Positions 2,221-61,102 of a DNA stretch of 64,000 nucleotides are shown piece by piece. The stretch is from the IMG/VR virus record IMGVR_UViG_3300031951_000001, positions 1 through 64,000 of that record; one strand, 5' to 3'. A program made the position numbers and the translations under genes. Under the pieces are notes generated by a model. It did not search any database. It was not told the DNA's origin and saw only the letters and a list, made by a program, of their open reading frames with translations. The first letter of the stretch is position 1; the number at the start of each line of letters is the position of its first letter.

Positions 2221-2445
2221 ATGTCAAAAGAAATGGTTAATCATCCTGACCACTATGGTGGGGAGGAAAATGCGTATGAGGTTGTAAAGGTTGCGGAAGC
2301 ATGGGGACTTGACCATGACGCATATCTATTCAATGTGGTTAAATATGTGGCTCGTGCCGGTAAAAAGGACCCAAGTAAAGAACTACAAGATTTAAAAAAG
2401 GCTTTATGGTATTTGGACAGAAAAATTCAAAATTTAGAAAAATGA
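2221..2445 (+). CDS. DUF3310 family protein
   Basis: VNHPDHY...NVVKYVARAGKK...DLKKALWYL signature. Confidence 0.85.
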   Translation: MSKEMVNHPDHYGGEENAYEVVKVAEAWGLDHDAYLFNVVKYVARAGKKDPSKELQDLKKALWYLDRKIQNLEK

Positions 2446-3284
2446 TAGAAAATTATATAAATAAAGTAATCAACGGTGATTGTGTTGAAGTAATGAGAGA
2501 GATGCCCGATTCATTCGTTGACTTGATTGTCACCTCACCACCTTACGGAGTAAACATTAAATATGATGTCCACGATGATGATATGGAGATAAGTCAATAT
2601 TTGGATTTTACTCGTAACTGGATGGCCGAAGCCTACAAGGTATTAAAGGATGATGGTCGTATTGCTGTTAATATTCCATATGAAATTAATCGTCAAGAAA
2701 AGGGTGGAAGAATCTTTTTGGTGTCTGAAGTTTATCAGGTGATGAAAGAAATTGGATTTAAGTTTTTCGGTATTGTAGATTTGGAAGAAGATAGTCCACA
2801 CCGCAGTAAGACAACCGCTTGGGGAAGTTGGATGAGTCCATCAAGTCCTTATATCTATAACCCAAAGGAGTGTGTAATTCTTGCTTATAAGAAACATCAT
2901 ATTAAGAAAGTGAAGGGAGAGCCACAATGGAAAGGAGAACCAATTCAAACCGAGGAAGGTAAAACTAAAATGTTGTATACTGAACAGGATAAGAAAGAAT
3001 TTATGGAATTGGTGTTCGGTCAATGGAAGTACCTCAACGATAGTAGACCAATGACAAAGGCGACATTTTCAATGGATATCCCAACAAAGGCAATTAAGAT
3101 ATTGAGTTATAAAAATGACGTTATTCTTGACCCATTCAACGGGAGCGGTACAAGTTGTGTGGCGGCAGAAACTTTAGATAGAAGATGGATAGGAATTGAG
3201 TTAAGTCATAATTATGCTGAAATATCTCGAGAACGAATACAATCGTTTATCAATCTAAAAAAACAACAAGAAATAGAATTTTAA
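2442..3284 (+). CDS. DNA N4-cytosine/N6-adenine methyltransferase, beta class
   Basis: Motif IV TSPPY near the N-terminus, motif I ILDPFNGSGT near the C-terminus; ATG 2442 overlaps the upstream stop. Confidence 0.9.
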   Translation: MIENYINKVINGDCVEVMREMPDSFVDLIVTSPPYGVNIKYDVHDDDMEISQYLDFTRNWMAEAYKVLKDDGRIAVNIPYEINRQEKGGRIFLVSEVYQVMKEIGFKFFGIVDLEEDSPHRSKTTAWGSWMSPSSPYIYNPKECVILAYKKHHIKKVKGEPQWKGEPIQTEEGKTKMLYTEQDKKEFMELVFGQWKYLNDSRPMTKATFSMDIPTKAIKILSYKNDVILDPFNGSGTSCVAAETLDRRWIGIELSHNYAEISRERIQSFINLKKQQEIEF

Positions 3285-6234: not shown

Positions 6235-6660
6235 ATGGAGAACATAAAAAGGTACGCTGGGATAATTGTTAAGCACAAAGATGAAGTTTTATTGTGTAAA
6301 AGAAACGCTGATAATGATTTACCTGGTGTTTGGTCCATACCTGCCGGAAGATTAGAAGATGATGAAAACCCTACTTTGGGGGCTAAAAGAGAATTTCATG
6401 AAGAGACAAATGTTAAAGTAAAAGATAAGATTGAGCTTTGTGGGTTTATTAATAGAACAACTCGTGACGGTAAAAAAGTAAAAGGGTTGATGTATGTGTT
6501 TTTATGGGAGGTAAATAAGAAAGTAAAACCTGATTTGGAAAACGCTATTGACGGAGACGAACATACTGAATGTGGGTATTTTGGTATAGATAATTTACCC
6601 GAACACGATGAAAATGATAAATTGATGTCGTTAATCAAAAATATTTTGAAAAAATCGTGA
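6235..6660 (+). CDS. NUDIX hydrolase
   Basis: Nudix box GRLEDDENPTLGAKREFHEETN. Confidence 0.9.
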   Translation: MENIKRYAGIIVKHKDEVLLCKRNADNDLPGVWSIPAGRLEDDENPTLGAKREFHEETNVKVKDKIELCGFINRTTRDGKKVKGLMYVFLWEVNKKVKPDLENAIDGDEHTECGYFGIDNLPEHDENDKLMSLIKNILKKS

Positions 6661-6732
6661 ATTTTTCAAAATTACAATATATTTATCTTTCACAAACGCC
6701 CAACAACCCTTTCTTTATAGTTGGTAATATTG

Positions 6733-6780
6733 AACCCTAACATTTTTTTGAAAGAAAAACTGTTAGGGTTTTTCTTTTTT
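6733..6780 (+). terminator. Terminator-like hairpin upstream of smpB
   Basis: AACCCTAACA/TGTTAGGGTT 10-bp stem followed by a T-run. Confidence 0.7.
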
Positions 6781-17267: not shown

Positions 17268-17942
17268 ATGAAACTTCAGAAATTTTTTAAATTATTACCT
17301 GACTTTATTAAAGATATTAATGTAGAAGGTATTATTATTAAACATACTGGTGAGTTTATCACCACCCCATACTCACGAAGATATGAAGTTGAAGTTCCGG
17401 TATATACGATAGAAAATCCTAATGATTTACCATATACCAAGGAATCTTTGACCACATGGCTGGCGGAAGAGTATTTAGGGTTTCAAAGATTTGTGAATAT
17501 TTTAGCCGGAGGACCAATAACGTACTTCGTTGAATTTGACAATTCGGTTAAGGATATATACATACCAAAACAAATTAAGGAAGAAATTGATAATTGTTTA
17601 GAATCTAAAAATTTCAATAAAGTGGCTTGGAGAAATCCTGAAAGTATCAGAGTTATTGGTGAATTCAAACGGTATAACACATTTGATACTGAAGACGATA
17701 GAATTATATGGCAAGTTGATTTTAAACCTCATAGAATTGAAATTGTTGATGAATCCGGAGTATTCAAAAAAGAAGTTAGTAAATCGGACTATGATTACAT
17801 TTTTGAAACATTGAGAGAGGATATAGAATTTTTCGAAAACAATATCTGGTCTTGTATTCAATATAAATTGGCCAATAGAAAGACATTCATAGATTTTGAT
17901 TGGATGAGTTGGTATACCCACGTAGATAACGTAAATTACTAA
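17268..17942 (+). CDS. Hypothetical protein
   Basis: TATTTAT upstream; 224 aa. Confidence 0.65.
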   Translation: MKLQKFFKLLPDFIKDINVEGIIIKHTGEFITTPYSRRYEVEVPVYTIENPNDLPYTKESLTTWLAEEYLGFQRFVNILAGGPITYFVEFDNSVKDIYIPKQIKEEIDNCLESKNFNKVAWRNPESIRVIGEFKRYNTFDTEDDRIIWQVDFKPHRIEIVDESGVFKKEVSKSDYDYIFETLREDIEFFENNIWSCIQYKLANRKTFIDFDWMSWYTHVDNVNY

Positions 17943-18061
17943 CCTTTTCCTTCAACCCTACCCAATCTTTCCCTGATGACATCATTCATTGTCAAATCAG
18001 TTTGATTCATAATTTTTTGTAATTCTTGTTCAGTCAATCCTGATAAAATATCTTTCATACC

Positions 18062-18562
18062 TTATTTCTTTCCACCAAAAGTTTTGATTGTAAAATACCA
18101 ACTTGGTTTTATGTGTTTTGGGTCTTCTATAACCACATAGATTCTACCTGTTTCTAACCCTGTATTATCATCAGAAACCGCATCTTTACCAACGGCAACT
18201 GTCCAAATATATCCCTCTTCATCCTTTACCATACTTTGGATATACATTGAGTAACGGCTAAACCATTTCTCAACAATAAATCCATTGTTAGGTAATCCCT
18301 CTGAACTAAGTGTAAGTTTAGATGGATATTTGATACCAATCAAGGTTCCCTTGTTAGAAATATCAACATAAATCGCATGTTTCCCAGCCTTTACCTTCTT
18401 CTGTTCCCAATTTATTGAAATGGTGTCAGGAGGAATAAATGTTCCTTCTTCAAATGTTTGAACTACCCACAAATCTGATTTAAAAGACACCGGGTCTTTG
18501 TAAGTTTGTGAGAATGCGTTAAGCGTTACTATGGTGAATAGTAATAAAAATACGTGTTTCAT
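18062..18562 (-). CDS. Secreted protein with SPI signal peptide
   Basis: MKHVFLLLFTIVTLNAFS|Q. Confidence 0.7.
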   Translation of the reverse strand: MKHVFLLLFTIVTLNAFSQTYKDPVSFKSDLWVVQTFEEGTFIPPDTISINWEQKKVKAGKHAIYVDISNKGTLIGIKYPSKLTLSSEGLPNNGFIVEKWFSRYSMYIQSMVKDEEGYIWTVAVGKDAVSDDNTGLETGRIYVVIEDPKHIKPSWYFTIKTFGGKK

Positions 18563-18629
18563 TTATTAGGTTTTATAGTAAATATCTTAAACAAAACGCG
18601 AGTTAAGATAGACTATAATTTTTTAGTTG

Positions 18630-18701
18630 TAGTCGGTAGGGGATTCGAACCCCTATGACAAGAATGAAAATCTTGTATCCTAACCCTTAGATGAACCGAC
18701 C
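18630..18701 (-). tRNA. trnE: tRNA-Glu(TTC)
   Basis: Cloverleaf: GGTCGGT/ACCGACT acceptor, CAAGA-TTTTCAT-TCTTG anticodon arm, AGGGG-TTCGAAT-CCCCT T arm; CCA not encoded. Confidence 0.92.
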
Positions 18702-18704
18702 ATA

Positions 18705-18915
18705 TGTTAACACCCTCCTTTATCCAACTAACAGGTGTTGTGGCTGTCCTCAATTACTTGAGTTAGGAATAAACTGTCTTGCTCCCCTTCGTGATGGGTC
18801 TTACCGACCTTAGTAGTCAACTAGAAGGTAATATATATACAAACCTTCAACTCTTCCCTATGGCTATCACACCATTTCTCATCGTATGGGACATACTATC
18901 CGATGATTAGTCGGA
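18705..18915 (-). ncRNA. Candidate structured ncRNA of unknown class
   Basis: Non-coding, GC-richer, six or more hairpins between tRNA-like element A and tRNA-Glu. Confidence 0.45.
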
Positions 18916-18920
18916 ACGTG

Positions 18921-19038
18921 TAGTCAGAACAGGATTCGAACCTGTATTTACACTTTACTTGTATTAGCTGTGTCCGATGGATTGGGTATCAATACATTTC
19001 CCTCACCACCTGCTCTTAACCATTAGAGCTACCTGACT
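18921..19038 (-). ncRNA. tRNA-like element A (118 nt, expanded core)
   Basis: AGTCAGG/TCTGACT acceptor + A73, GCTC/GAGC D stem, ACAGG-TTCGAAT-CCTGT T arm; 65-nt core with no 7-nt anticodon loop. Confidence 0.7.
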
Positions 19039-19093
19039 AACGAGAGTTATTAAGATTTTTGAATAGGTCTTTACTCTCAAATAAACCTACGAG

Positions 19094-19188
19094 TAGTCAG
19101 GACAGGAATCGAACCTGTATGATAACACGCCCTTTTATATTAACGATTGTTATCTACGTATAGCGTCTACCAATTCCGCCACCTGACT
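19094..19188 (-). ncRNA. tRNA-like element B (95 nt)
   Basis: AGTCAGG/CCTGACT acceptor + A73, Leu-type D arm GGCGGAATTGGTAGACGC, canonical T arm; no canonical anticodon arm. Confidence 0.7.
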
Positions 19189-19195
19189 ATATTTT

Positions 19196-19294
19196 TTACT
19201 TCGCTCTGCCGTAAATTAAATACCTTTCATATTCACCTTCGGCCAACACTACATACTGACCTGCAATTTTTACTACATACATTCTTTCTTTCAT
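19196..19294 (-). CDS. 32-aa small ORF (MKERMYVVKIAGQYVVLAEGEYERYLIYGRAK)
   Basis: Read by hand; AT-rich upstream; lies between tRNA-like elements B and C. Confidence 0.45.
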   Translation of the reverse strand: MKERMYVVKIAGQYVVLAEGEYERYLIYGRAK

Positions 19295-19310
19295 AACATT
19301 TTATTTTTTG

Positions 19311-19408
19311 TAGTCAGGACAGGAATCGAACCTGATATCGCCCATTTGGATGCCTACTCCACCATAAGTGTCTCGGACTTGGTGCGTATGCCAACACGCC
19401 ACCTGACT
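19311..19408 (-). ncRNA. tRNA-like element C (98 nt), possibly a degenerate tRNA-Leu(GAG)
   Basis: AGTCAGG/CCTGACT acceptor, GCGT/ACGC D stem, bulged stem closing loop CCGAGAC, enlarged variable region, T arm. Confidence 0.65.
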
Positions 19409-19484
19409 ATATCTTATTTCAAATAACTTCTACAAATATATGGTGGATTTTCTATCCCACCAAATCTAATTTGTTAAATTTTTG

Positions 19485-19605
19485 TGGCCAGGGTGAGACT
19501 CGAACTCACAACGATGCAACCCTATTACTTCTCGTGTCCAAATGGTTATGGACCGTGGTGTCTTTGGGATGTGATAGCCGTTTCCACATTACGCATTACC
19601 TGACC
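19485..19605 (-). ncRNA. tRNA-like element D (121 nt)
   Basis: GGTCAGG/CCTGGCC acceptor + A73, GTGAG-TTCGAGT-CTCAC T arm, about 90-nt multi-hairpin core. Confidence 0.65.
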
Positions 19606-19702
19606 AATTTGGGTGGGTTAATGAGTGGTTTCCCCCACCTCTTTTTACTCTGTATCAATCTACTTGCGAAGTAGTATCAACCTGCGCCACTCTGTGAATT
19701 TT

Positions 19703-19786
19703 GAGGATGAGAATCCCTCTGTGTTGTAGTGATGACTCTAGTGTCACTAAGCTCTACTCCTTTCCTTTCTCAAGGGAACAACACAC
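19703..19786 (-). ncRNA. Candidate structured ncRNA (multi-way junction)
   Basis: GTGTTGT/ACAACAC stem enclosing TTCC/GGAA and AGTGA/TCACT hairpins, then a GAGG/CCTC hairpin. Confidence 0.45.
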
Positions 19787-19922
19787 AAGTATAGGATAAG
19801 TAGAAGATGGGGGAGTGGACATCTACTTTTACGATTGGCGTTTCTCGCTATTGTGCTAGCCCCAAAATCCCAATCAACCTTTTAGTATCTCAAAGAACTT
19901 CTACAAATATAAGGAGAATCTT

Positions 19923-20231
19923 TTATTCTACCAAATCTTTTTCAATTACTTCATCCCAATCCTCAACCACAAACTTCAAACTAATCCACTCAACATCATC
20001 TTTGTTATTGTATGTGGCGTAAAATCCGCCTATTGCAATTGACATCTTTTCCTTAACGGCTTGTGTCAATAATCTTCTTGCCTCCGTGCGAATTTCACAT
20101 TCATCGGGAACCCTCATACCGTCATCAATACTTATCCATTTCCAATCGAGAGCTACCATTACCTTATGAACTCGACCAAAGTCAAAGTAGTCCATAACTT
20201 TACCAATTGCGTTAAATTCTTTTTCTTTCAT
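19923..20231 (-). CDS. Hypothetical protein
   Basis: TATATTTG upstream; MDYFDFGRVHKVMVALDWKW. Confidence 0.65.
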   Translation of the reverse strand: MKEKEFNAIGKVMDYFDFGRVHKVMVALDWKWISIDDGMRVPDECEIRTEARRLLTQAVKEKMSIAIGGFYATYNNKDDVEWISLKFVVEDWDEVIEKDLVE

Positions 20232-20466
20232 TTGACAAATATATGGTGACTTTTTTAGATGACCAAATCTTTTTTTGTGATTTTACTAAACTCGTAACCT
20301 TCGTGAAACATTCTATCAAGAAGCTCAACAGTGATTTCATCAAGGTCAATCATACCAATCATTTTGCTTTTTTTGTAAACGCCAACGTACTCCATAGTTT
20401 TTATTTTTAAGTAGGCAAATATACAACAAAATAGGTTACGGTAACATTAAGTTATTGACAAATTAA

Positions 20467-20895
20467 TTAAAATTTGTAGTCGAATGTTAGGCCATCATGG
20501 CATACAATATTCTTATCAACGATATCCCTCAATTTATCGGTAGGATAAGGACCCATTAATCTTTTTTTACATTCTTCTACATTATCTTCCATTAGGTCAA
20601 CACCATATGTGGTGGATAATGCTTCTTCTAATGAACATCCACTTCTTTCCATCTTTCGTATAACAATCTCACCCAAAAACTCACCATCACCGCAGCTGTT
20701 ATCAATGAATGTTTTGGTTGGGTCAGTGAATAATGACGGCTCTTGTTCTTCTAACTTATCAATCATTTCAATAACTAAATGATTGGGAGTAAAAACCTCG
20801 GCAGTTTGCTTAATCCTAAGTTTGTCCCTATCAACACCGGACATATAAGTTCGGTTTCTAATGTGATTAATATAATCATTTAACATTATTTTCAA
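20467..20895 (-). CDS. SAM-binding half of an adenine methyltransferase, no catalytic NPPY
   Basis: AEVFTP and IDNSCGDGEFL and YGVDL motifs; ends at IVCHDGL before motif IV. Confidence 0.7.
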   Translation of the reverse strand: MKIMLNDYINHIRNRTYMSGVDRDKLRIKQTAEVFTPNHLVIEMIDKLEEQEPSLFTDPTKTFIDNSCGDGEFLGEIVIRKMERSGCSLEEALSTTYGVDLMEDNVEECKKRLMGPYPTDKLRDIVDKNIVCHDGLTFDYKF

Positions 20896-22063
20896 TATAT
20901 TGAATTTCTAAGTCAGTTAATTCAAATTTTTTGTATAAATCATAATCACTATAATTTGTGTCACTTGATATTTTTGGTATATTTTTGAGTACTTCACCGT
21001 GAAAAAATCCTGAAAACTTACTCAAATTTAAACAATGTTTATATAGTTTTGTATTTAGCAATTTAATCAAAAATTCCGCATCCGCTTTGGAGTCAAATAT
21101 GTGAAAAAAACTGTGTTGAGTTGTATTACAATTAGTATCTATTATAGGATTTAGATATCCACTGTCACTAATTACTACTTTTAATTTGGGATAATTTTCA
21201 GTCATAAAGCTTGAGTAGATTATTTTGCTGGCGTGATATGTTTTATATTTAAAAACATCATCTTTAGTAACCGATAACAAATGTTTTTTGTTAGTTTTAT
21301 GTAATTGACTATTACTTTCAAAGGTATACTTTTCTTTTTTGGAAAAAAATTTATTAAAAATTGAAAAATCAATCGGGTTAGATGAGTTAGGTAATATTTT
21401 ATCTTTAAGACTTATGGATTCTCCACCAATTTTACACAATCCATCATAATTTTTAGACCAATAATAATAACAAGCTTGAGTACCCACACCAATAAAAGGG
21501 GATTCATCGAATATTTTTAGTAATTTTAAACCTCCACTTTCATACATTTTTTTCAAAACTAAGTGATTTGGTGATAAAAAACTTGGTGGAGTTATAAAAA
21601 AAACATTATCGGAAATTTCCATAGATTTTATAATAAATTTGGACCAAAGGTTATTAGCACCGCCTTTACCACCACCCTTACTTTTACCGTTATTATCAAC
21701 TTCTTGATATGGAGGGTTACCAATCACAACATCAAATTTCATTTTAATTTTATCACTTAAAAAATCTTTATGATGGATATTAACATAACCTCTTCTTTTG
21801 AGTTTGTTAATGTATTTTATACGGATTTCATAACCGTAAACTCTAGATTTAGCGTCCAACTCACTATATCCATAAATATCAACCAAACGTCTCACAATCT
21901 CAGAAAGGAATGTCCCTGTGCCCATGCAAGGGTCTAAAAAGTTTGATTTTGAATTTAACCATACATCTGAAGGAATCTCATCTAAAATAAGATTAACCAA
22001 TTCGATAGGGGTAAATACTTCACCTTTAGAAGGGTCTGGCTTCCATTTTTTTAAGTTGTCCAT
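20876..22063 (-). CDS. Eco57I-like (gamma class) N6-adenine DNA methyltransferase with target-recognition region
   Basis: GEVFTP, FLDPCMGTGTF and DVVIGNPPY motifs. Confidence 0.88.
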   Translation of the reverse strand: MDNLKKWKPDPSKGEVFTPIELVNLILDEIPSDVWLNSKSNFLDPCMGTGTFLSEIVRRLVDIYGYSELDAKSRVYGYEIRIKYINKLKRRGYVNIHHKDFLSDKIKMKFDVVIGNPPYQEVDNNGKSKGGGKGGANNLWSKFIIKSMEISDNVFFITPPSFLSPNHLVLKKMYESGGLKLLKIFDESPFIGVGTQACYYYWSKNYDGLCKIGGESISLKDKILPNSSNPIDFSIFNKFFSKKEKYTFESNSQLHKTNKKHLLSVTKDDVFKYKTYHASKIIYSSFMTENYPKLKVVISDSGYLNPIIDTNCNTTQHSFFHIFDSKADAEFLIKLLNTKLYKHCLNLSKFSGFFHGEVLKNIPKISSDTNYSDYDLYKKFELTDLEIQYIENNVK

Positions 22064-22064
22064 C

Positions 22065-24275
22065 TTACAAAGATAAAGTGTTTTCTTGTTTGTTGTAGGA
22101 CGTAATAATAGTGTTCAATAGTTTCTCAGACAAGGCTCCACCGAGGATGAGTTTTTTAACCGTATAAGAGTTAACACCAACTTCATAAATAAGCTCCTCA
22201 CCTAACTTCTTATCCTCAATCATATCAAGTACTTCAATAATGTTGTTTGATTCACAGTTGTTAATTTCAGATATCTCAACAATGTTTTTAACTATATTTG
22301 ATAATACTTCTTTCAGTTTAATTCTGAGGTTATCAATTACAACAGTATTTTGAGAAGAATTGTTTTCAGTCTCTTCATCTACTGACCTTTTAACTTTAGA
22401 TGAATCAATACCTTCAATTTTATCTTTTGATGAGTTATCACTAATCTCAACACCTGTCAATACTTTTACCATTTCTGAATCATTTATAACGGAATCGACA
22501 TTAACTGATTCTGAACCGATACGAATAAGTGAAGTAGAGTTAACTAATTTGTCGGCATATTCATCTAGAACAATCGGAGACATAACACCATTATCATTAA
22601 CAAATATATTTACAGAACGAAGGACTCGTAAAATGCCATCGGTTAATTCTTGAACCTGAACTCGTTCACCTTCATATACCAAATATTCATCAATCGGACT
22701 AATCTCTTCTCTATTAGGGTCAAGTGACAATGATATAACGTTACCAATGGTTTTAGGTTCACCATTATAAGTTAAACCTGGTGTTAATACCCTTGAAACT
22801 TTTTGGGCAACTGACGAATATGAGCCTCTATCAAACATTAACATTACCGTATCGATTTCAGGTATAGAGAAACTTCTTGAAGCCATGTCCTTACTTATGA
22901 AAACAACTTTCTTTCCTTGTCGTTTAGCAATTGCCACAATCTCCTTCGCCTCCTTCTCCGATTCGCGGTTAGAGGTTTCATCGCTATTAAACAATTTAAC
23001 CATATATTGAGGTCCTAATGTATCTTGAACTAGTTTATAAAACTTATTCTGTTCCTTACGATTAGGAGTACTGGCGAAAATCATTGTAACGTCTTTAGGA
23101 GATAACTCATCGGTATTTAAATCAACCAAATAAGTCATTCTACCATTATATGCACCAAATAATGATTTAATCAAATCAGTAAGAATACCTTTAGATTTTG
23201 AAACATCCATTAAAAGTTTATTCCAATCTGTACGGTACTCTTCAGGTATAGAATTAAATCTATCAATAATACCACCAATTGATAACTTTAAAAACTGAGG
23301 AGTTACGATACCACTTACCGATGATATGGATTCAGTTTTATTAGACAAATTGGCTTGTGACGGATGTAACCCATTCTTAACCATAAGCATGTCGGTATAC
23401 GACCAATGGATTATGTTATCACGAAGATTTGTAAGAGGGGCTGATACTTTCTCAAGACCGGTACCTGACATGTAAATATTCAAGTGGCAATCCAAGTACT
23501 CAATCTTATCTAAACTATTAATCCTGTGAGCTCCGAAGTCGGCTTCATCTATAATTGACATCTTTTCATTTGACGGAATATTTCTTAATGTTTCTAGCTT
23601 AGACTGATGTTCGGTCATGTGAAGAGAGGCGGCGACCACAATCATCTTATCACCGTAGTAATCATTGATTGATTCTTCTAAATCAGTAATATCGTCAACG
23701 AATACCATTGAGTCCGAAAACCCTTTAAATTTATAAAAATCAACTTCAAATGACGAGATTGCGGTCAGAACGTAGCTAGGAATAATACAAACCTTAATAC
23801 CTTTTTCAAGATATAAATTTTTAATCAGATTTAAAGACCATAATGTTTTACCGAATCTTGGTGCTAACTCTAAAGCAAAATCAATTTTTTTATATCCCGA
23901 TTGAATTTCTGAGTTGTATTTGTTTAGAAACAAATCACTTACAAAAGATTGAAAAAAACGAGTTTTAAATTCTACACGAGTATCTGAACCTGATTCAGAT
24001 ATTATTTTACTAACAGATGCCACGACTTCATCGTCAGATTTGAATCCACCAACCCATTCACGGGTTACTTTATGATAACCTAAAAGACGCAATGATTGTC
24101 TTACTTCATGGTCTGATAATGTAGTTTCACATTCAAAAATTGTTATAAATTCTTCAGATGAGCCGGTTTTTTGTTGACCAATTCTTTTTTTGGCGGTTTG
24201 TTTTCTAGACTCACCAATTTTGTATCGACCAAGTGACCTGTTGTATTCAGTGGTATAAATGTAGATTGTATTCAT
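22065..24275 (-). CDS. T5orf172/GIY-YIG-like nuclease fused to a superfamily-2 helicase/ATPase (restriction-subunit-like)
   Basis: N-terminal IYIY..YKIG..RIGQQ..REW; Walker A APRFGKT; IIDEAD; MSGT; QKVSR. Confidence 0.75.
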   Translation of the reverse strand: MNTIYIYTTEYNRSLGRYKIGESRKQTAKKRIGQQKTGSSEEFITIFECETTLSDHEVRQSLRLLGYHKVTREWVGGFKSDDEVVASVSKIISESGSDTRVEFKTRFFQSFVSDLFLNKYNSEIQSGYKKIDFALELAPRFGKTLWSLNLIKNLYLEKGIKVCIIPSYVLTAISSFEVDFYKFKGFSDSMVFVDDITDLEESINDYYGDKMIVVAASLHMTEHQSKLETLRNIPSNEKMSIIDEADFGAHRINSLDKIEYLDCHLNIYMSGTGLEKVSAPLTNLRDNIIHWSYTDMLMVKNGLHPSQANLSNKTESISSVSGIVTPQFLKLSIGGIIDRFNSIPEEYRTDWNKLLMDVSKSKGILTDLIKSLFGAYNGRMTYLVDLNTDELSPKDVTMIFASTPNRKEQNKFYKLVQDTLGPQYMVKLFNSDETSNRESEKEAKEIVAIAKRQGKKVVFISKDMASRSFSIPEIDTVMLMFDRGSYSSVAQKVSRVLTPGLTYNGEPKTIGNVISLSLDPNREEISPIDEYLVYEGERVQVQELTDGILRVLRSVNIFVNDNGVMSPIVLDEYADKLVNSTSLIRIGSESVNVDSVINDSEMVKVLTGVEISDNSSKDKIEGIDSSKVKRSVDEETENNSSQNTVVIDNLRIKLKEVLSNIVKNIVEISEINNCESNNIIEVLDMIEDKKLGEELIYEVGVNSYTVKKLILGGALSEKLLNTIITSYNKQENTLSL

Positions 24276-24303
24276 GATACAAATGTAATGGTAAAAAAGT
24301 TAA

Positions 24304-25283
24304 CTAAAGTAAATCCCTCAAATGACGCTGAAGTGTAAAGTATTTTACTCTCCACTCATTTGCTTCATCCATATACTTCTTCATCATAATAGAATCGTTA
24401 TAACGAAGATTTTCGATTCTATCAATTATTTCATTAGAAAGATTAAACTCTTTAAGGTTTCTTTCCCAATGGCTACTCAATGGTAGTCTTTCTTCTGTAA
24501 TGTTTTCCATACCTCAAATATACTTGTTAAACAAATTTTCTAAAGTATCAATGTCATCAACTGACATTTGATGATATTTTTGAGAAAGTGATGTTAATTT
24601 CTCAACAAACTTTTCTTCCTGTGAGGTCATTTTAGTTTCATCAGGAACACCAAATTTACTCAAATAACCCTGATTAGAAAGGTACTTCAAAAGATTTTCA
24701 ATATCTCTTGTACTACAAGAATCAACAAATTCATCAATTTCTATGTCAACATCAATGTCGACTGTGGTGTAAATGGACGCCATAATTATTTATTTTTTTC
24801 GGTTTTGATTGTTATTACTAAAACTAGGAACAAATATACGTAAAAAGATATAATTGCCAAAGCAAGATATAAATTTTCATTCGTTGTCATCGAACAAACT
24901 TAAATAAAAAAAACCGAATGGTCAAATTACTGTGGAATAATATCAGAACAAGTTTCTAACAATTGAATCAAACCAATGTTGATATCTTCTGACTCTAACT
25001 TCTTGATGATTCTTTTTAAACTTAAACCAACGATGAAGTGGTCCACACCACCTGCAGTGATTAAACCTATGAAGGCGAATGCCCATATTGCCAAAGGCCA
25101 CGATTGACCCATTATTGCTATAGATAAGACCGCAATAAAACTAATACCAAATGAAGTTTTTATTACGTTTTTATTTCTCTCCATCCATCTTAAGATTCCT
25201 AAATCAAAGTATTCCTCACTGAATACTTTTTTTACTCTGTTAATTTCTAATTGTGTCATAACTTTAATCTTATTTATATTCAT
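24304..25283 (-). CDS. Three hypothetical proteins (24304..24510, 24514..24783, 24927..25283; the last has TM helices)
   Basis: Co-oriented ORFs. Confidence 0.6.
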
Positions 25284-25785
25284 CAGGTATTATTCTCAAA
25301 ACTTCTTCATCACTAACTCCACCCTTAATGTATTCAAAACTTTTACCATTTATTGATTCGGCATATATCCAAACCATTTTATCGTTTAACTTATTATCAT
25401 TGAATGAACCTACGGCAACTTCACCACCCATATCTGACAGGTAATCATCCAACCAAGTTAATAACATTTGCATGAGTGCTGGTGATTTTTGAATTTCAGG
25501 TATTATAACATCAACCGTGGCGTTATAATGATTAAAATCGTCTACATCTATTGCTTCTAAATCAGTCAATATAAAATTCAAAGAAAACATAACCATTTCT
25601 CCGTCCTCACCCTCGGCGGAACAATCCATAGAACCACCAAGTTTGGTCTGTATCATCGCATATAAATAAGGATATTTTTTTGTTACATTCAATAACTCAT
25701 GAACACTACCAAAGAATTTGGCAACATCAAAAACACTTTGACCCTTGTCTAACATTGATATTATGTTTTCGGCAACTCTGCTCAT
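25270..25785 (-). CDS. Hypothetical protein
   Basis: TATTTAT upstream on the minus strand. Confidence 0.65.
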   Translation of the reverse strand: MSRVAENIISMLDKGQSVFDVAKFFGSVHELLNVTKKYPYLYAMIQTKLGGSMDCSAEGEDGEMVMFSLNFILTDLEAIDVDDFNHYNATVDVIIPEIQKSPALMQMLLTWLDDYLSDMGGEVAVGSFNDNKLNDKMVWIYAESINGKSFEYIKGGVSDEEVLRIIPDEYK

Positions 25786-25997
25786 ACCGTATAAATATCC
25801 CCAAGTATTATTTAGGTTTTTTCAATATTTATATTAAACGTATTTAGAATGGCAAAAGCAAGAAAAGAAACAAAGAAAAAAGGTAACCGTGTGAATATCG
25901 TTAAAAATCTGAAAAGGATTGAAGAAAACGATAGAGTGTTGAAAATGTTGGTTGAGAAGATGGTGACCAAAAAATAAACCACTTAAAAAACAAAAAA

Positions 25998-26656
25998 ATG
26001 GATTTTCCTTTATTGTGGGCATGTATTTGGAAAACTTGGAAGTATCATCTTTCAGGTTGTATGTTTATTTTAACAATGTATATCTTTAATGAATGTGGAG
26101 TTTGGGAAGATGAGTTCAGTCTTTGGTATGTTTATGGACCTGTAAGTTTACTTATTCCACTTATCGTTGTGGTACCAGCCATTCTAATGGTCAGAGATTC
26201 ATATAAACATTACTTGGACATAAAAAAATACTATCCCAACGGATATAAAAACAGAGAAAAGAAATGAATCTAATACATGTAATTCTATGTTTGATTGGTG
26301 CGGGATATGCTAAAGGTAGATTGGACCATATCGCTGACACAGGACAAAAGGGTGATGATTGGAAGAACAAATATAAACAAAAGGACGGACAACTCGTACC
26401 TTCAGGAAATCATTGGTGGTACTTTGGTTTATATAAACCAAACTTTCAAGAAAGGTTTCCATTCAGTTCAACTGTTATGGTTTTCGTAACTGATAGATGG
26501 CATTGGTGGCAATTTGCTATGTTGAGGTATTTTTATTTGGCGATTGCTTATGGCGTTGCGGATAACTTTATACATCAGATGTTATTGACATTTGTGGTAT
26601 TCCCCATTGTTCTTGGAGTGACATTCGAGTTAGTATATAAGTGTAAGAAGAAATGA
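25998..26656 (+). CDS. Two membrane proteins (25998..26267, 26264..26656)
   Basis: Hydrophobic helices; overlapping stop/start. Confidence 0.65.
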
Positions 26657-53399: not shown

Positions 53400-53418
53400 T
53401 TTGCCGTATATTCGCGGT

Positions 53419-54480
53419 ATGAATGAGGTTTTGAATAGATATTATGAGGAAGGATTGGTGTATAAACAAGTACATCCGACCCTTCCTTTGACTATTTGGA
53501 ATTATTCTGAAAAGGTTCAGTATGATAATTTATGGGATGATATAACTTTACAAACTCGAGGTCTTGTAACTGATGACGAGGGTAATATAATCGCAAGACC
53601 ATTTCGTAAATTTTTCAATGACACTGAAGGAAGACATACTCCGACAGAAGAATTTGATGTTTATGAAAAAATGGACGGTTCTTTAGGTATCCTATTTAAT
53701 TATCAAGGTGAATGGGTTATGGCTACCCGAGGGTCATTTGTATCTGAACAAGCAATCAAAGGTTTTGAGATTCTCAAGAATTATGATTATGAAAAACTTC
53801 ACAAGAATTACACTTACCTGTTTGAGATAATCTATAAGGAAAACAGAATAGTGGTTCAGTATGATTATGATGACTTAATCCTTATTGGTGTGATAGAAAC
53901 CAAAACCGGATACGAAGTTGATTTACATGATGGAGAAAATGATATCAGGTTGAGGAATATGATACATAATCTTGGGTTTAAATTGGTAAAAAAATACGAC
54001 CAACTTAAAAATTTTTCTCACTTGAAAGATTTTATACCCGACAATAAAGAAGGGTATGTTATAAAATTTTCTAACGGCGAAAGAATAAAAATCAAAGGTG
54101 AAGAATACTTAAGATTACATAAACTGATGACAAATGTCTCAACAACTGCGGTTTGGGAAATGTTAAGTGAGGGTCGTGATGTCTTGGAAATACTGAAAGA
54201 TGTTCCTGATGAATTCTATAAAAGAATAAAGATGTATGTTTTAGATTTGAGATATTCTTATTTATCTTATAGTGAATACGCGGGAAAAATGCATGACAAA
54301 TTCCGTTACGGTAAATTTAACGATAGATATCCCGAGCCGACCAAAAAAGAATTTGCGGAATTTTTGACATTGAATAATATTGACCCGAAGGTGAAAGCAT
54401 TATGCTTTGCGATATGGGACAATAAGAATTATGATAAAATGATATGGAAATATATAAAACCTGAATTTAAAAGATTATGA
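53419..54480 (+). CDS. T4 Rnl1-like RNA ligase
   Basis: ARPFRKFFN, EKMDGS (motif I), ATRGSF, FEII, EGYVI and RIKIKGEEY; start ATG 53419. Confidence 0.9.
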   Translation: MNEVLNRYYEEGLVYKQVHPTLPLTIWNYSEKVQYDNLWDDITLQTRGLVTDDEGNIIARPFRKFFNDTEGRHTPTEEFDVYEKMDGSLGILFNYQGEWVMATRGSFVSEQAIKGFEILKNYDYEKLHKNYTYLFEIIYKENRIVVQYDYDDLILIGVIETKTGYEVDLHDGENDIRLRNMIHNLGFKLVKKYDQLKNFSHLKDFIPDNKEGYVIKFSNGERIKIKGEEYLRLHKLMTNVSTTAVWEMLSEGRDVLEILKDVPDEFYKRIKMYVLDLRYSYLSYSEYAGKMHDKFRYGKFNDRYPEPTKKEFAEFLTLNNIDPKVKALCFAIWDNKNYDKMIWKYIKPEFKRL

Positions 54481-58188: not shown

Positions 58189-59805
58189 ATGAAAGATATT
58201 AACGACCTTCACCAAGAACTTGATGATTTGACTTACCTTAACGCAAAGATGAGAGATGAGGGATTTGATTATTGTTTCCGTCATTATTCATCATTTGAAG
58301 AAATTAAGGATGAGAAGTTTCACGAACTCAGGTTGAAGTACATTCAAATTGCCGAGGAACTTGAGAACTATGTGAACACTCAATATGAATTGAAACAAGA
58401 CGAAATTGATAACTACGAAGAAAAAGATGAAAATTAATATGAATATAACTCGGCATTTTTTTTATGTCTTGTTAACGGTTTTTATTTTATCTGGTTGTGG
58501 AGAATCAGTCAATGAAAAAAACTTTGATATAAGTATGCAGAAAATAAATGGTGAATGGATACGCGAATCACATTCATTACCTGAAGACGCAGATTTTTTC
58601 ATTGACACTTTCAATGGCAGTTATTCATTACGATATATTAGAGGTGAAGGTAATTGTTTTTCCAAAAGAGAGAAACTTGTGAGAAACGGGATTATTGATT
58701 ATAGGATTAATAACTAATAATTACGAATATGAAAATAACATTTGGCGACCTCAAAACAGGGGACAGAATTAAGACAAGATACTCAGGTATGGCAACGGTA
58801 GTTGAAACTGGTTGTTATAAAGGAACAATGGTTAAACTGAAATGTGATACCCCAAAGTGGTGCTGTCCTTATTTTTATGAACACGAATTAGAATTAATAT
58901 GAATAATACAGAAATAACACCGGTACCTGAAATCACCGCCGACACCACAAGAGTATGTGAAATCAGATTTGATTGTTTGGTTACAATGCATGATGTGGGA
59001 TATAGAAAATATGAAGGGATGTGGGGTCAGGAGAAACAATCAAAGACACCACAATGGTTCAGAGCGAATCATAAAATAACACTTGAAAGCGTTAAACACG
59101 CTGACCCATATGAACTTGGGATGAGAATAAAACAAATGTTTCACGAATTAGAAAATACAATTAAAAAATATGAAAACGGAACAACCTATCAAAGTCATGA
59201 ATAAAGAACAACAACAGATTATTGATGAGGTGTATGAGAGATATTGGAGTAGTATTGAAACTTCAGAATATGATGGGATTGGTCCTACATCAATTAAGTT
59301 ACCAACACTAATGAAAGAAGAGTTCATCAACAAATGTAAAACAGACCCAGAGTTCTCTGAAAAGTGGGGGTTGAAGATTTATACCAAAGTAGATGGTGAT
59401 AAGGTTTGGATGGGAATGGTTTATAATGATAATGCTGTTGAAATTAGATTAAAATAGAAAGTTATGAATGAAATACGTAGGCTAATTAAAAAAATTGAAT
59501 ACACACATTATATAGAGTATAAGGGAAAACAATATACTAGAAAAGAAGTTATTATACCAAAGGCTTTTTCTTGGGAAGGTACACCTGATAAACTTGAGGA
59601 TATACATACTATTTCGTGGCAAGATTATGATTATGAGGTTTATCAAAATAATGGAAATATTCATTATTTTAGTTGTGACCACGGATGGGCTAAAAATGGC
59701 GTGATGGATAAATCAAATCCTGTGCCTAAAATAGAAAAATGTTTCAAAAAAACTATTGGTAAAGATTTAATATATTTCAACGAAACAATAGAAAGTTATG
59801 AGTAA
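58189..59805 (+). CDS. Run of hypothetical proteins (58189..58437, lipoprotein 58427..58717, 58899..59204, 59170..59457, 59464..59805)
   Basis: Coupled ORFs; lipobox LSG|C in the second. Confidence 0.6.
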
Positions 59806-61102
59806 AATACAAGTAACACAACCAACATTTCTAATCAATTTAGATAATCCGACAGAAGTTAGTTATGTGCCAATGGAAGGTAATTGGAAATCAATTATAG
59901 TTGAAACATATCAACATGGGTTTCCTGAAATACAAGATGATGAAATTCTTTATGTCTATAAAGAAAATAGAGGTTATATTAAAAAACAAGTTATGACTAA
60001 TACATTAGACAAACAATACCAAGACCTACTCCAAACAATTTTGGATTTTGGTTGTACGAAGAGTGACAGGACTGGAACTGGAACCAAATCAATTTTTGGT
60101 TACACCATCCGTCATAATATGAAAAACGGATTCCCACTTCTTACAACAAAGAAGATGGCGTTTAAAACAATGGTAACCGAGTTGTTATGGTTCTTGAGAG
60201 GTGATACTAACATCAAATACCTTGTTGACAATAATTGTCATATCTGGGACGGAGACGCTTTCAAAAACTACATCAGTAAAACTAATGAATTCAAAGGTGA
60301 TTGGCCGGACACAATGGAAGAATTCATCAACAAAATAAAAACGGATGATGGGTTTGCTAAAAAATATGGGGAATTGGGTTCCATCTATGGGAAACAATGG
60401 AGAAGATGGACTAAAAAGAAAATGTATCTATCAACAGATGGTTCATATGAAAACATTTATGATGAGGCAGACCAAACAGTTATAGACCAAATAGCAATCC
60501 TCATTAACGAACTCAAAACAAACCCAGACTCAAGACGACTAATGGTTTCAGCTTGGAATGTAGGTGAATTAGACCAAATGGTTCTTCCACCTTGTCATTA
60601 TGGATTTCAAGTTTATACAAGAGAGTTGAGTTATGATGAAAAAAGAAACATTTATAATTCAGACCCAATGAGTTATGGAGGTACAGCGTCTCCATTACCA
60701 CCAAATTCTGAAGAAATTAAATTTGACCCCCATCACGCAGAGAAAGATTGGGACAATAATTACGCAAGTAAAAAGATTCCAACCAGAGCAATCTCATTAA
60801 TGTGGAATCAACGTTCCGTCGACACATTATTGGGGCTCCCATTCAATATAGCATCATACGGATTACTATTAACAATAATTGCCAAAGAAGTTAATATGGT
60901 ACCTGATGAATTGATTGGAAATTTGGGTGATACCCATTTATACCTCAACCATATTGAACAAGCAAAAGAACAGATTGGTAGAGAACCATTTGAATTACCA
61001 AATTTAGTAATAGAACATAGTAGTTTAGAGCCGGTTGAATTGGTTTATAAGTTAGAAAACTATCAATCACATCCAGCAATTAAGGCACCACTATCCAACT
61101 AA
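59798..61102 (+). CDS. thyA: Thymidylate synthase with N-terminal extension and insertions
   Basis: DRTGTGT, FPLLTTKK, ELLWFLRG, LPPCH, QRSVD and PFNIASY; core could start at ATG 59993. Confidence 0.95.
   Translation: MSKIQVTQPTFLINLDNPTEVSYVPMEGNWKSIIVETYQHGFPEIQDDEILYVYKENRGYIKKQVMTNTLDKQYQDLLQTILDFGCTKSDRTGTGTKSIFGYTIRHNMKNGFPLLTTKKMAFKTMVTELLWFLRGDTNIKYLVDNNCHIWDGDAFKNYISKTNEFKGDWPDTMEEFINKIKTDDGFAKKYGELGSIYGKQWRRWTKKKMYLSTDGSYENIYDEADQTVIDQIAILINELKTNPDSRRLMVSAWNVGELDQMVLPPCHYGFQVYTRELSYDEKRNIYNSDPMSYGGTASPLPPNSEEIKFDPHHAEKDWDNNYASKKIPTRAISLMWNQRSVDTLLGLPFNIASYGLLLTIIAKEVNMVPDELIGNLGDTHLYLNHIEQAKEQIGREPFELPNLVIEHSSLEPVELVYKLENYQSHPAIKAPLSN

What the first reader, a model, noticed from the sequence alone, without database searches (positions are those of the whole stretch)
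20467..24275. Phage-encoded nuclease-helicase plus methyltransferase module with unusual architecture
Seen: three abutting genes: a T5orf172/GIY-YIG-like domain fused N-terminally to an SF2 ATPase (APRFGKT, DEAD), a full NPPY methyltransferase with recognition region, and a half methyltransferase. Host-type promoters precede the first two. Established: type I, III and ISP restriction systems pair an SF2 translocase with an m6A methyltransferase, usually with a PD-(D/E)xK or PLD nuclease. Inference: an ATP-dependent restriction system carried by a lytic phage, aimed at competing phages or host DNA, with a GIY-YIG-type cutter.
Basis: partly seen in the sequence, partly recalled or inferred. Interest (0 to 1): 0.6.

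Follow-up and report, generated by a model that had tools for sequence, protein, structure and literature searches.

The report
Phage nuclease-motor-methylase cassette, restriction-like
A freshwater jumbo phage carries a three-gene cassette, so far seen only in viruses (a GIY-YIG-like nuclease fused to a DNA motor, an adenine methylase with a swappable recognition domain, and a very conserved half-methylase), that is built like an ATP-dependent restriction-modification enzyme, though no activity has been tested.

Summary
The three abutting minus-strand genes are real. A (24275..22065, 736 aa) is a T5orf172/GIY-YIG-like domain joined to an SF2 ATPase and a family-specific C-terminal domain. B (22063..20876, 395 aa) is an Eco57I-type NPPY adenine methylase with a C-terminal recognition domain. 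C (20895..20467, 142 aa) is the SAM-binding half of such a methylase and stops just before NPPY. The claimed host-type promoters are no more than chance; the genes look co-transcribed.

The cassette is a conserved unit. The order A-B-C recurs in most related viral contigs, down to 25-30% helicase identity, and in the cultured cyanophage S-CAM7, where every gene is annotated "hypothetical". Its parts are variously fused (A+B, half of A+B, C+B) or split. Pattern scans of 185,579 prokaryote species genomes found no relative of A. C is the best conserved part. B's recognition domain is hypervariable, even between near-identical strains.

The domain order matches Type ISP enzymes, with a GIY-YIG-like nuclease in place of Mrr. 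I read it as a phage-borne ATP-dependent restriction-modification machine (confidence 0.45). A DarB-like self-protecting methylase-motor is the main rival (0.25). The role of the half-methylase is unexplained. I class it as a new variant of a known kind.

The parts
22065..24275 (-). Gene A, 736 aa: T5orf172/GIY-YIG-like domain, SF2 ATPase and a family-specific C-terminal domain
   Evidence: ORF. About 400 metagenomic relatives in the word search and 777 in a profile search of 1.84 billion representatives. AF2 model with pLDDT 79 and pTM 0.76.
23991..24275 (-). A residues 1-95: T5orf172/MUG113 (GIY-YIG clan)-like putative nuclease domain. Conserved residues are Y5, K19, G21, R31, E73 and W74.
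   Evidence: Conserved columns. Pfam hits in relatives. Domain model with pLDDT 87; its top PDB matches are At-HIGLE and Slx1, Z 4.6-5.3. PADLOC PDC-S57 matches this domain only, and only in relatives.
22596..23978 (-). A residues about 100-560: SF2 ATPase core with two RecA-like domains. Walker A (APRFGKT) is at 23844-23864 and DEAD at 23538-23549.
   Evidence: Invariant motifs. ResIII in 15 of 31 and Helicase_C in 18 of 31 relatives. Structural matches RadD Z 19.3, Snf2h Z 17.7, LlaBIII Z 16.8 and Foldseek LlaBIII E 2.6e-9.
22068..22595 (-). A residues 561-736: family-specific, mostly helical C-terminal domain that runs straight into the methylase in fused relatives (linker or coupler position)
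   Evidence: Conserved EISEINNCES and LSEKLLNTIITSYNK blocks. Profile hits extend to position about 725-735 in most relatives. Fusion junction seen in P0067.
21554..22063 (-). B residues 1-170: gamma-class N6-adenine methylase catalytic half. It has motif X (GEVFTP), motif I (LDPCMGTGTF), and NPPY at 21707-21718.
   Evidence: Pfam Eco57I E 1.4e-13 and N6_Mtase E 1.3e-9. PADLOC MTase_II E 8.7e-21. 55-65% identical in close relatives. Closest solved sequences are 7lni/8cxz (a site-specific adenine methylase), TaqI, BseCI and BrxX.
20876..21553 (-). B residues 171-395: hypervariable target-recognition domain
   Evidence: Only 17-36% identical where the catalytic half is 55-65%. tblastn finds no match in L002, L003 and L007-L009. 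Related strains in runs X19 and X20 cover the flanks but give zero depth over 20970-21551. Variant contigs in X16 break at 20908, 20915, 21265 and 21734.
20467..20895 (-). Gene C, 142 aa: stand-alone N-terminal (SAM-binding) half of a gamma-methylase. It has motif X (EVFTP) and motif I (DNSCGDGEF, 20677-20703) and ends where NPPY would start.
   Evidence: 33% identical to B residues 14-91. PHROGs 11371, 4376 and 21201, E 1e-15 to 1e-18. 2573 relatives of about 140 aa. 55-82% identical across loci where the helicase is 26-65%. ESM Atlas model pTM 0.81, with methylase N-terminal halves as structural neighbours. Aligns to residues 14-159 of the methylase in 8cxz.

Best explanation
A, B and C form one phage-borne ATP-dependent restriction-modification machine that works like a Type ISP or Type I enzyme.

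Proposed mechanism, all inferred:
- B reads a short DNA site through its exchangeable C-terminal recognition domain and methylates an adenine. Phage DNA therefore carries the mark.
- On unmarked sites, the SF2 motor of A, docked to B through its C-terminal domain, translocates along double-stranded DNA using ATP.
- The N-terminal GIY-YIG-like domain of A then nicks or cuts.
- The targets would be the host chromosome and, above all, co-infecting related phages with a different specificity. That would explain the hypervariable recognition domain.
- C, a SAM-binding half-methylase without a catalytic loop, is an obligatory accessory subunit. My guess is that it pairs with the methylase as a non-catalytic partner, or couples SAM or methylation status to the motor-nuclease.

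What is shown: the domain content, the fusions, the conserved gene order, the distribution of relatives, the conservation of nuclease and ATPase hallmark residues, and the variability of the recognition domain. Cleavage, translocation, methylation, complex formation, the targets and the role of C are all inferred.
For: - Domain set and order. A GIY-YIG-like domain, SF2 ATPase, linker, gamma N6A methylase and recognition domain are encoded by abutting genes and as one polypeptide of 1070-1158 aa in relatives. Type ISP enzymes are defined by the order nuclease, SF2 helicase, gamma-methylase, recognition domain (PMC3553950). That paper already mentions related enzymes with helicases and GIY-YIG nucleases.
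- Foldseek's top whole-protein hits are ATP-dependent restriction enzymes: LlaBIII E 2.6e-9, SauUSI and EcoR124I HsdR.
- GIY-YIG hallmark positions (Tyr5, Gly21, Arg31, Glu73) and the Walker A, Walker B and motif VI residues are invariant or nearly so among 31 relatives of 51-89% identity.
- Evidence for one complex: A+B fusions; the C-terminal half of A fused to B (L008); C fused to B (L010). The order A-B-C is kept in most related contigs down to 25-30% helicase identity, while the window's flanking ORFs have no match in any fetched locus.
- The recognition domain is 17-36% identical against 55-65% for the catalytic half, and it is replaced between strains that are otherwise 90-99% alike.
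- The genome also has two ordinary orphan methylases, so this methylase is not needed merely as 'a methylase'.
Against: - No biochemical, methylome or expression evidence exists. The two runs labelled RNA-Seq are probably DNA.
- No relative of A was found in one genome for each of 185,579 prokaryote species. That is odd for an effective restriction system and fits a counter-defence function. The scan rested on two peptide patterns, so it is not exhaustive.
- The window's own N-terminal domain fails Pfam thresholds, and the structural matches to GIY-YIG nucleases are weak (Z about 5).
- The second-look alignment puts RadD (Z 19.3) and Snf2 motors level with or above LlaBIII (Z 16.8).
- PADLOC has no model that matches A. 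Relatives match only a candidate family over the nuclease-like domain.
- The model gives no reason why C should be the best conserved part, or why it also occurs without A (S-SKS1, P-SSM2).
Confidence: 0.45

Rival explanations
1. Counter-defence by motor-driven self-methylation, working like the DarB-type methylase-helicase dyad. The SF2 motor carries the methylase along incoming or replicating phage DNA, so its sites are methylated before host restriction enzymes act. The T5orf172-like domain would serve DNA binding, loading or nicking rather than restriction.
For: No relative of A was found in prokaryote genomes, and all contexts examined are phage. This matches methylase-helicase dyads, which are confined to phages, plasmids and conjugative elements. 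P1 DarB protects DNA in cis against type I enzymes (PMC5512222). The motor resembles Snf2-type double-strand translocases (Z 16-18). Variable recognition domains could track the host's restriction specificities.
Against: DarB-type dyads have the order methylase then SWI2/SNF2 helicase, with an N-terminal LPD36 domain, inside giant virion-packaged polyvalent proteins (PMC5512222). Here the order is reversed and the proteins are small. Conservation of the GIY-YIG hallmark residues has no role in this model. The genome already has two orphan methylases of the usual protective kind.
Confidence: 0.25
2. A selfish mobile cassette. The GIY-YIG-like domain acts as a homing-type endonuclease that cuts cassette-free genomes of co-infecting relatives. 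The methylase protects the carrier, and repair copies the cassette in. Spread, not benefit to the phage, explains its presence.
For: Only A-B-C are shared with other loci; the window's flanking ORFs have no match in any fetched locus. One contig in run X19 joins 20227 to 24415, which would be a variant without the cassette (weak: depth 2, 21 letters on the shorter side). GIY-YIG homing endonucleases are common in large phages, and a SegE-type gene lies just upstream in L035.
Against: Homing endonucleases need neither a 450-aa ATPase motor nor a methylase with exchangeable specificity. The cassette keeps the same position in related phages L002 and L003. The joint evidence is below the tool's own reliability limits. 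In mechanism this largely overlaps the restriction-modification reading.
Confidence: 0.1
3. A DNA repair, recombination or replication-restart helicase-nuclease of the phage, with the neighbouring methylases marking parental strands or regulating gene expression.
For: The best second-look structural match of the ATPase is the repair helicase RadD (Z 19.3, rmsd 3.9, 322 residues aligned). The top matches of the N-terminal domain are junction-resolving GIY-YIG nucleases, At-HIGLE and Slx1. A Holliday-junction-resolvase-like role for T5orf172 proteins in jumbo phages has been proposed (PMC7824862).
Against: A repair helicase has no reason to be fused to a site-specific methylase with a hypervariable recognition domain. 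Identity to RadD is 16-18%, and the Z scores of unrelated SF2 groups are tied. The cassette is absent from most relatives of the phages that carry it: only 2 of 50,697 phage records match A.
Confidence: 0.1

Closest known systems
Type ISP restriction-modification enzymes (LlaGI, LlaBIII)
   Same: The domain order is the same: nuclease, SF2 ATPase, linker, gamma-class N6A methylase, C-terminal recognition domain. Fused relatives carry this in a single polypeptide. LlaBIII is the top Foldseek hit for A (PMC3553950).
   Different: The nuclease is T5orf172/GIY-YIG-like, not Mrr/PD-(D/E)xK. In the window the enzyme is split into two genes. It is about 1130 aa in all, against about 1570 aa. There is an extra obligatory half-methylase gene. 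The known distribution is viral only. There is no detectable sequence similarity to LlaGI or LlaBIII.
Type I HsdR and Type III Res/Mod systems, and SauUSI
   Same: A nuclease domain on an SF2 motor that works with an adenine methylase. HsdR and SauUSI are among the top Foldseek hits. ResIII Pfam hits occur in 15 of 31 relatives.
   Different: There is no HsdS subunit; the recognition domain is part of the methylase. The methylase is gamma-class with a C-terminal recognition domain, not a Mod-type enzyme with an internal one. The nuclease has a different fold and is N-terminal. No PADLOC type I or type III model matches A.
DarB-type methylase-helicase dyad of phage and plasmid polyvalent proteins (PMC5512222)
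   Same: A TaqI/EcoKI-like gamma adenine methylase coupled to an SF2 double-strand DNA motor, confined to mobile elements.
   Different: The order is reversed (motor then methylase). There is no LPD36 domain and no giant polyvalent protein. A nuclease-like domain and a half-methylase are present.
T5orf172 / MUG113 (GIY-YIG clan) domain proteins, including the PADLOC candidate PDC-S57
   Same: The N-terminal 85-95 residues of relatives match these models: PF10544 E 4.4e-10 and PDC-S57 E 1.6e-10.
   Different: The similarity is at domain level only. PDC-S57 models are 212-245 positions long and match nothing beyond the first 85-170 residues, mostly the first 85-105.
Orphan and type II gamma-methylases (the adenine methylase of PDB 7lni/8cxz, M.TaqI, M.BseCI) and BREX BrxX/PglX
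   Same: These are the closest solved sequences to B and to the half-methylase C.
   Different: None is known to work with a stand-alone half-methylase or with a GIY-YIG-like motor protein.

Membership tests
Type ISP restriction-modification | All activities in one polypeptide | tested here: not met
   In the window, A and B are separate ORFs in different frames, with a TAA stop, one base, then ATG. Relatives of 1070-1158 aa are fused.
Type ISP restriction-modification | N-terminal Mrr-family PD-(D/E)xK nuclease | tested here: not met
   The N-terminal domain is T5orf172/MUG113-like in relatives. Its structural top hits are GIY-YIG nucleases.
Type ISP restriction-modification | SF2 helicase-like ATPase followed by a gamma N6A methylase and a C-terminal recognition domain | tested here: met
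   Walker A, DEAD and motif VI are conserved. Eco57I and N6_Mtase with NPPY, plus a variable C-terminal 225 aa.
Type ISP restriction-modification | ATP-driven one-way translocation and cleavage that needs head-to-head sites; methylation of one strand | not testable with these tools
   Needs enzyme assays and a methylome.
Type I restriction-modification | Separate HsdS specificity subunit with HsdM and HsdR | tested here: not met
   No HsdS-like gene lies in or beside the cassette. Recognition is part of B.
Type III restriction-modification | Res with a C-terminal PD-(D/E)xK nuclease; Mod with an internal recognition domain | tested here: not met
   The nuclease-like domain is N-terminal and GIY-YIG-like. 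The methylase motif order is X, I, IV with a C-terminal recognition domain.
DarB-type methylase-helicase dyad | LPD36, then methylase, then SWI2/SNF2 helicase, in a polyvalent protein | tested here: not met
   The order here is motor then methylase. The proteins are 736 and 395 aa. The definition is from PMC5512222.
T5orf172 (PF10544) / GIY-YIG clan | Match to the family model over its cut-off | tested here: inconclusive
   The window's protein gives no hit at E<=1 in the protein scan or at E<=0.1 in the genome scan. Homologues 36-50% identical over the domain do hit.
T5orf172 (PF10544) / GIY-YIG clan | Conserved Tyr (strand 1), Gly of the second strand motif, Arg (helix 1) and metal-binding Glu | tested here: met
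   Y5, G21, R31 and E73 are invariant or at least 90% conserved in 31 relatives. I matched these residues to the canonical catalytic positions by eye from memory of the GIY-YIG motif, not by a structural superposition.
Eco57I-type gamma N6A methylase (PF07669 / PF02384) | Score over the curated cut-off, plus motif I and NPPY | tested here: met
   B scores 51.7 bits (cut-off 25.3) and 38.3 bits (cut-off 20.4). NPPY is invariant. C matches only the first about 90 profile positions and lacks NPPY.

The most novel reading that the evidence does not exclude
The roughly 140-aa half-methylase defines a new class of non-catalytic, SAM-binding accessory subunit used by phage DNA methylases. It is widespread in T4-like cyanophages, Aeromonas phages and Lak megaphages, and it also occurs fused to a full methylase. 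With the GIY-YIG-like motor protein and an exchangeable recognition domain, it makes a restriction-modification type known only from viruses, whose main use is warfare between co-infecting phages.
Probability: 0.2. Interest if true: 0.8.

Novelty: new variant of a known kind. Interest (0 to 1): 0.62.

Why it matters
If the cassette restricts DNA, it would be an ATP-dependent restriction-modification architecture with a GIY-YIG-type nuclease and a third, non-catalytic methylase-like subunit. It would be maintained by large environmental phages rather than by bacteria. That would be evidence that phages use self/non-self DNA marking against their hosts or against each other.

It would also give names to genes now annotated "hypothetical" in cultured cyanophages (S-CAM7 carries the whole cassette; ACG-2014f, P-SSM2, P-SSM5 and S-SKS1 carry the half-methylase). 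S-CAM7 and its host Synechococcus WH7803 offer a tractable system for testing it.

The family's naturally exchangeable recognition domains could become a source of new methylation or cleavage specificities.

If the cassette instead protects phage DNA, it would be a compact second form of the methylase-motor counter-defence known from P1 DarB.

Tried and rejected
- Complex prediction of B with C returned 'no answer' (score 0.00). It is evidence neither for nor against binding.
- Near-identity DNA search of phage records found nothing. A protein search with A found only S-CAM7 and one uncultured phage.
- A profile of the A family against PDB sequences gave no meaningful hit.
- I looked for a split-methylase partner for C, that is, a C-terminal half beginning at NPPY. 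No second Eco57I-like gene exists in the 322-kb genome, so I dropped that idea for this phage.
- P-SSM2 gp035 (1147 aa, upstream of its half-methylase) looked by size like a fused A+B. Profile comparison shows no relation. The N-terminal part of Aeh1p090 is also unrelated to A.
- Two bacterial loci carry C-like short proteins (Geodermatophilus and an alphaproteobacterial MAG). One lies near a Schlafen-type helicase, the other near a transposase. I drew no conclusion from them.
- Rfam scan of 17500-26000 found only the tRNA-Glu.
- The runs labelled RNA-Seq (X19, X20) are probably DNA and are held only as contigs, so they say nothing on expression.
- Literature searches for this architecture found no description of it.
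- I did not test recognition-site avoidance or strand bias, because the recognition site is unknown.


Full report
**1. What is in the sequence**

The window is the first 64 kb of a 322,372-bp IMG/VR virus record that CheckV rates complete. Its G+C content is about 32%. Near-identical DNA occurs in freshwater and lake metagenomes from about 15 studies, and in three other IMG/VR contigs.

Three abutting ORFs lie on the minus strand:
- A: 24275..22065, 736 aa.
- B: 22063..20876, 395 aa.
- C: 20895..20467, 142 aa from a TTG start; an ATG lies three codons in.

A ends with TAA, and one base later comes the ATG of B. B and C overlap by 20 nt. A starts 28 nt after the stop of an upstream 68-aa ORF.

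Sigma-70-like sites are no more frequent than in shuffled sequence: 23 against 27.6 +/- 5.0. The two sites near the starts score 9 of 12.

**2. The three proteins**

*Protein A.* On its own it gives only weak Pfam hits: Helicase_C E 1.3e-3 and ResIII E 0.018. It matches nothing in PADLOC. It has about 400 metagenomic relatives.

In an alignment of 31 relatives, 51-89% identical, the following are invariant or nearly so:
- Walker A (ELAPRFGKT);
- Walker B (IIDEADFG);
- a TGT motif;
- QKxSRxLTPG;
- a family-specific C-terminal region (EISEINNCES, LSEKLLNTIITSYNK).

The same holds for Y5, K19, G21, R31, E73 and W74 in the first 95 residues.

The N-terminal domain does not reach the Pfam models in the window's own protein. 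It does in relatives: MUG113 in 13 of 31 and T5orf172 in 3 of 31, best E 4.4e-10. It also does in distant relatives (L010: T5orf172 E 7.7e-7 and GIY-YIG E 5.9e-3; L015: E 1.7e-3).

A model of the domain (pLDDT 87) was searched against 48,161 PDB chains. It finds three GIY-YIG nucleases first: At-HIGLE Z 5.3, and Slx1 Z 5.0 and 4.6. These scores are weak by the tool's own standard.

For the whole-protein model (pLDDT 79), Foldseek ranks LlaBIII (Type ISP), SauUSI and EcoR124I HsdR first. The second-look aligner ranks RadD (Z 19.3), Snf2h (17.7) and LlaBIII (16.8) as near ties. The motor is therefore an SF2 ATPase of the double-strand-translocase kind, without a clear subfamily.

*Protein B.* It is a gamma-class adenine methylase: Eco57I at 51.7 bits, N6_Mtase at 38.3 bits, and PADLOC MTase_II E 8.7e-21. 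It has motif X (GEVFTP), motif I, and NPPY.

*Protein C.* It is 33% identical to B residues 14-91. It has motifs X and I and ends exactly where NPPY would follow. Its Atlas model (pTM 0.81) superposes on the N-terminal halves of methylases. The closest solved sequence to both B and C is the 577-aa adenine methylase of PDB 7lni/8cxz.

**3. The three genes are one conserved cassette**

tblastn of the parts against all fetched loci shows the order helicase, methylase, half-methylase in every close relative. It also appears in most distant viral contigs where the helicase is only 25-34% identical. In three distant groups (L015-L017, L019, L022) tblastn found no C-like gene, and L018 ends before it. 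Two further distant family members from the profile search have the same layout in T4-like and other phage contexts.

The window's flanking ORFs have no match in any of these loci.

The parts are variously joined and split:
- A+B are fused in proteins of 1070-1158 aa.
- A is split between its two RecA-like domains in many loci and in S-CAM7.
- The C-terminal half of A is fused to B in L008.
- C is fused to the N terminus of B in L010.

These fusions argue that the three products act together.

The cultured cyanophage S-CAM7 has the whole cassette, genes CC030809_00053 to 00056, all annotated "hypothetical".

A profile of the A family finds only 777 proteins at E<=1e-3 among 1.84 billion representatives. 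It is therefore a small, self-contained family and not a generic helicase profile.

Pattern scans of one genome for each of 185,579 prokaryote species found no relative of A and only two short C-like genes. All contexts I examined were phage. The absence rests on two peptide patterns per scan, so it is strong for close relatives and weaker for remote ones.

**4. Uneven conservation**

Across loci, C is the best conserved part: 55-82% identity where the helicase is 26-65%. It is also the most widespread. The word search finds 2573 relatives of about 140 aa.

Relatives 30-40% identical occur in the cyanophages ACG-2014f, P-SSM2, P-SSM5, S-SKS1 and Bellamy, in about 30 Aeromonas phage records, and in Lak megaphages.

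C also occurs in other arrangements:
- with a methylase but no helicase, in S-SKS1;
- with neither detectable, in P-SSM2;
- as the C-terminal domain of a 415-aa protein, in Aeh1.

By contrast, the C-terminal 225 residues of B are 17-36% identical in relatives whose catalytic half is 55-65% identical.

In two runs holding strains 90-99% like the window, contigs cover A, the catalytic half of B, and C, but give zero depth over 20970-21551, which is the recognition domain. In another run, variant contigs leave the reference at 20908 and 21265, and one contig joins 20915 to 21734. So the recognition domain is exchanged between otherwise near-identical phages.

One weak joint (20227 to 24415; depth 2, 21 letters on the shorter side) may be a variant without the cassette. 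It is below the tool's reliability limits.

**5. Interpretation**

The domain set and order equal those of Type ISP enzymes, which run Mrr nuclease, SF2 helicase, gamma-methylase, recognition domain (PMC3553950). The difference is a GIY-YIG-like nuclease. That paper's discussion already notes related enzymes with helicases and GIY-YIG nucleases.

The hallmark residues of nuclease and motor are conserved. The fusions and the exchangeable recognition domain fit a machine that marks its own DNA and attacks unmarked DNA. For a phage, the plausible targets are the host chromosome and co-infecting relatives of other specificity. The latter would drive diversification of the recognition domain. I rate this at 0.45.

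The main rival, at 0.25, is a counter-defence methylase-motor that works like the DarB dyad (PMC5512222). It explains the viral-only distribution well. It gives no role to the nuclease-like domain, and this genome already has two orphan methylases.

A homing-type selfish cassette and a repair or recombination helicase-nuclease are less likely, at 0.1 each. The RadD and Slx1/HIGLE similarities and the proposal in PMC7824862 support the repair reading.

None of these explains why C is the most constrained part. In the distant branch, the full methylase lacks the N-terminal GEVFTP motif while C keeps it, and C there carries a short acidic-hydrophobic C-terminal tail. In this methylase family the TP motif contacts the Asn of NPPY (PMC5512222). 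This hints at a structural partnership between C and B, but it is only a lead. The co-fold of B with C gave no answer.

**6. Membership and novelty**

The cassette is not a member of Type ISP: it has a different nuclease fold, it is split in the window, and it shows no sequence similarity. It is not Type I (no HsdS), nor Type III (different methylase class and nuclease position), nor the DarB dyad (reversed order, no LPD36).

It works most like Type ISP. I found no description of this architecture in the literature searches, and PADLOC holds only a candidate family that shares the N-terminal domain. I class it as a new variant of a known kind.

Everything about activity is inference. The decisive tests are a methylome, restriction assays with motor and nuclease mutants, and deletion of C, most readily in S-CAM7 or by heterologous expression.

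Noticed in passing
window 18702-19660, minus strand: An ORF-free stretch of higher G+C downstream of the tRNA-Glu (18629-18701) holds three or four repeated tRNA-like units of 96-119 nt. They share an acceptor stem GUCAGGU and a T-arm GGUUCGAUUCCUGUCCUGACUAC. ARAGORN reports them only with its intron option (about 18920-19038, 19093-19188 and 19310-19408), and Rfam reports none. They may be interrupted or otherwise unusual tRNA genes.
   Followed up: partly
window 2406-3284 (+) and G000:C1:311395-312123 (+): The phage has two further stand-alone DNA methylases: an N6_N4_Mtase (PF01555, E 7.7e-37) and a Dam-like MethyltransfD12 (E 7.3e-19). No C5 methylase was found.
   Followed up: partly
window 59798-61102 (+) and 53401-54480 (+): The first is a thymidylate-synthase homologue of 434 aa with an N-terminal extension of about 60 aa (phrog_160, E 1.3e-104). 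The second is an RNA ligase (phrog_562). Eight of ten large ORFs tested have no PHROG match at 1e-5, so this phage is very poorly charted.
   Followed up: no
L032 (Aeromonas phage Aeh1) 4227-5474; L033 (Synechococcus phage S-SKS1) 3650-5387; L029 (P-SSM2) 6363-6761: The half-methylase also occurs outside the cassette. In Aeh1p090 (415 aa) it is the C-terminal domain, after about 280 residues of unknown nature. In S-SKS1 it follows a weak Eco57I-like gene, with no helicase. In P-SSM2 (PSSM2_037) it stands alone. One Atlas structural neighbour is a 641-aa C5-methylase family protein.
   Followed up: partly
L013, L019, L020, L022-L024 and L011 (methylase genes); L011, L013, L020, L023, L024 and L035 (half-methylase genes; L034 ends differently): In the distant branch the full methylase starts at ML.R[IM]K and lacks the GEVFTP motif, while the half-methylase keeps TGEVFTP. 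The half-methylase there also carries a variable linker and then a short C-terminal tail such as NLFEMEE, QLFEI, NLFELVT or SLLDLF, which looks like a docking peptide.
   Followed up: no
window 18062-18562, minus strand: A 166-aa ORF whose N terminus looks like a signal peptide (MKHVFLLLFTIVTLNAFSQ). It may be a secreted or lipoprotein-like phage product.
   Followed up: no
L010 (IMGVR_UViG_GVMAG-M-3300013132-70_000001, 5.6 kb): A contig labelled as a giant-virus MAG carries the cassette in a variant form: a T5orf172 plus first RecA-like domain gene, a second RecA-like domain gene, and a half-methylase fused to the full methylase. Either the binning is wrong, or the cassette reaches beyond tailed phages.
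   Followed up: no
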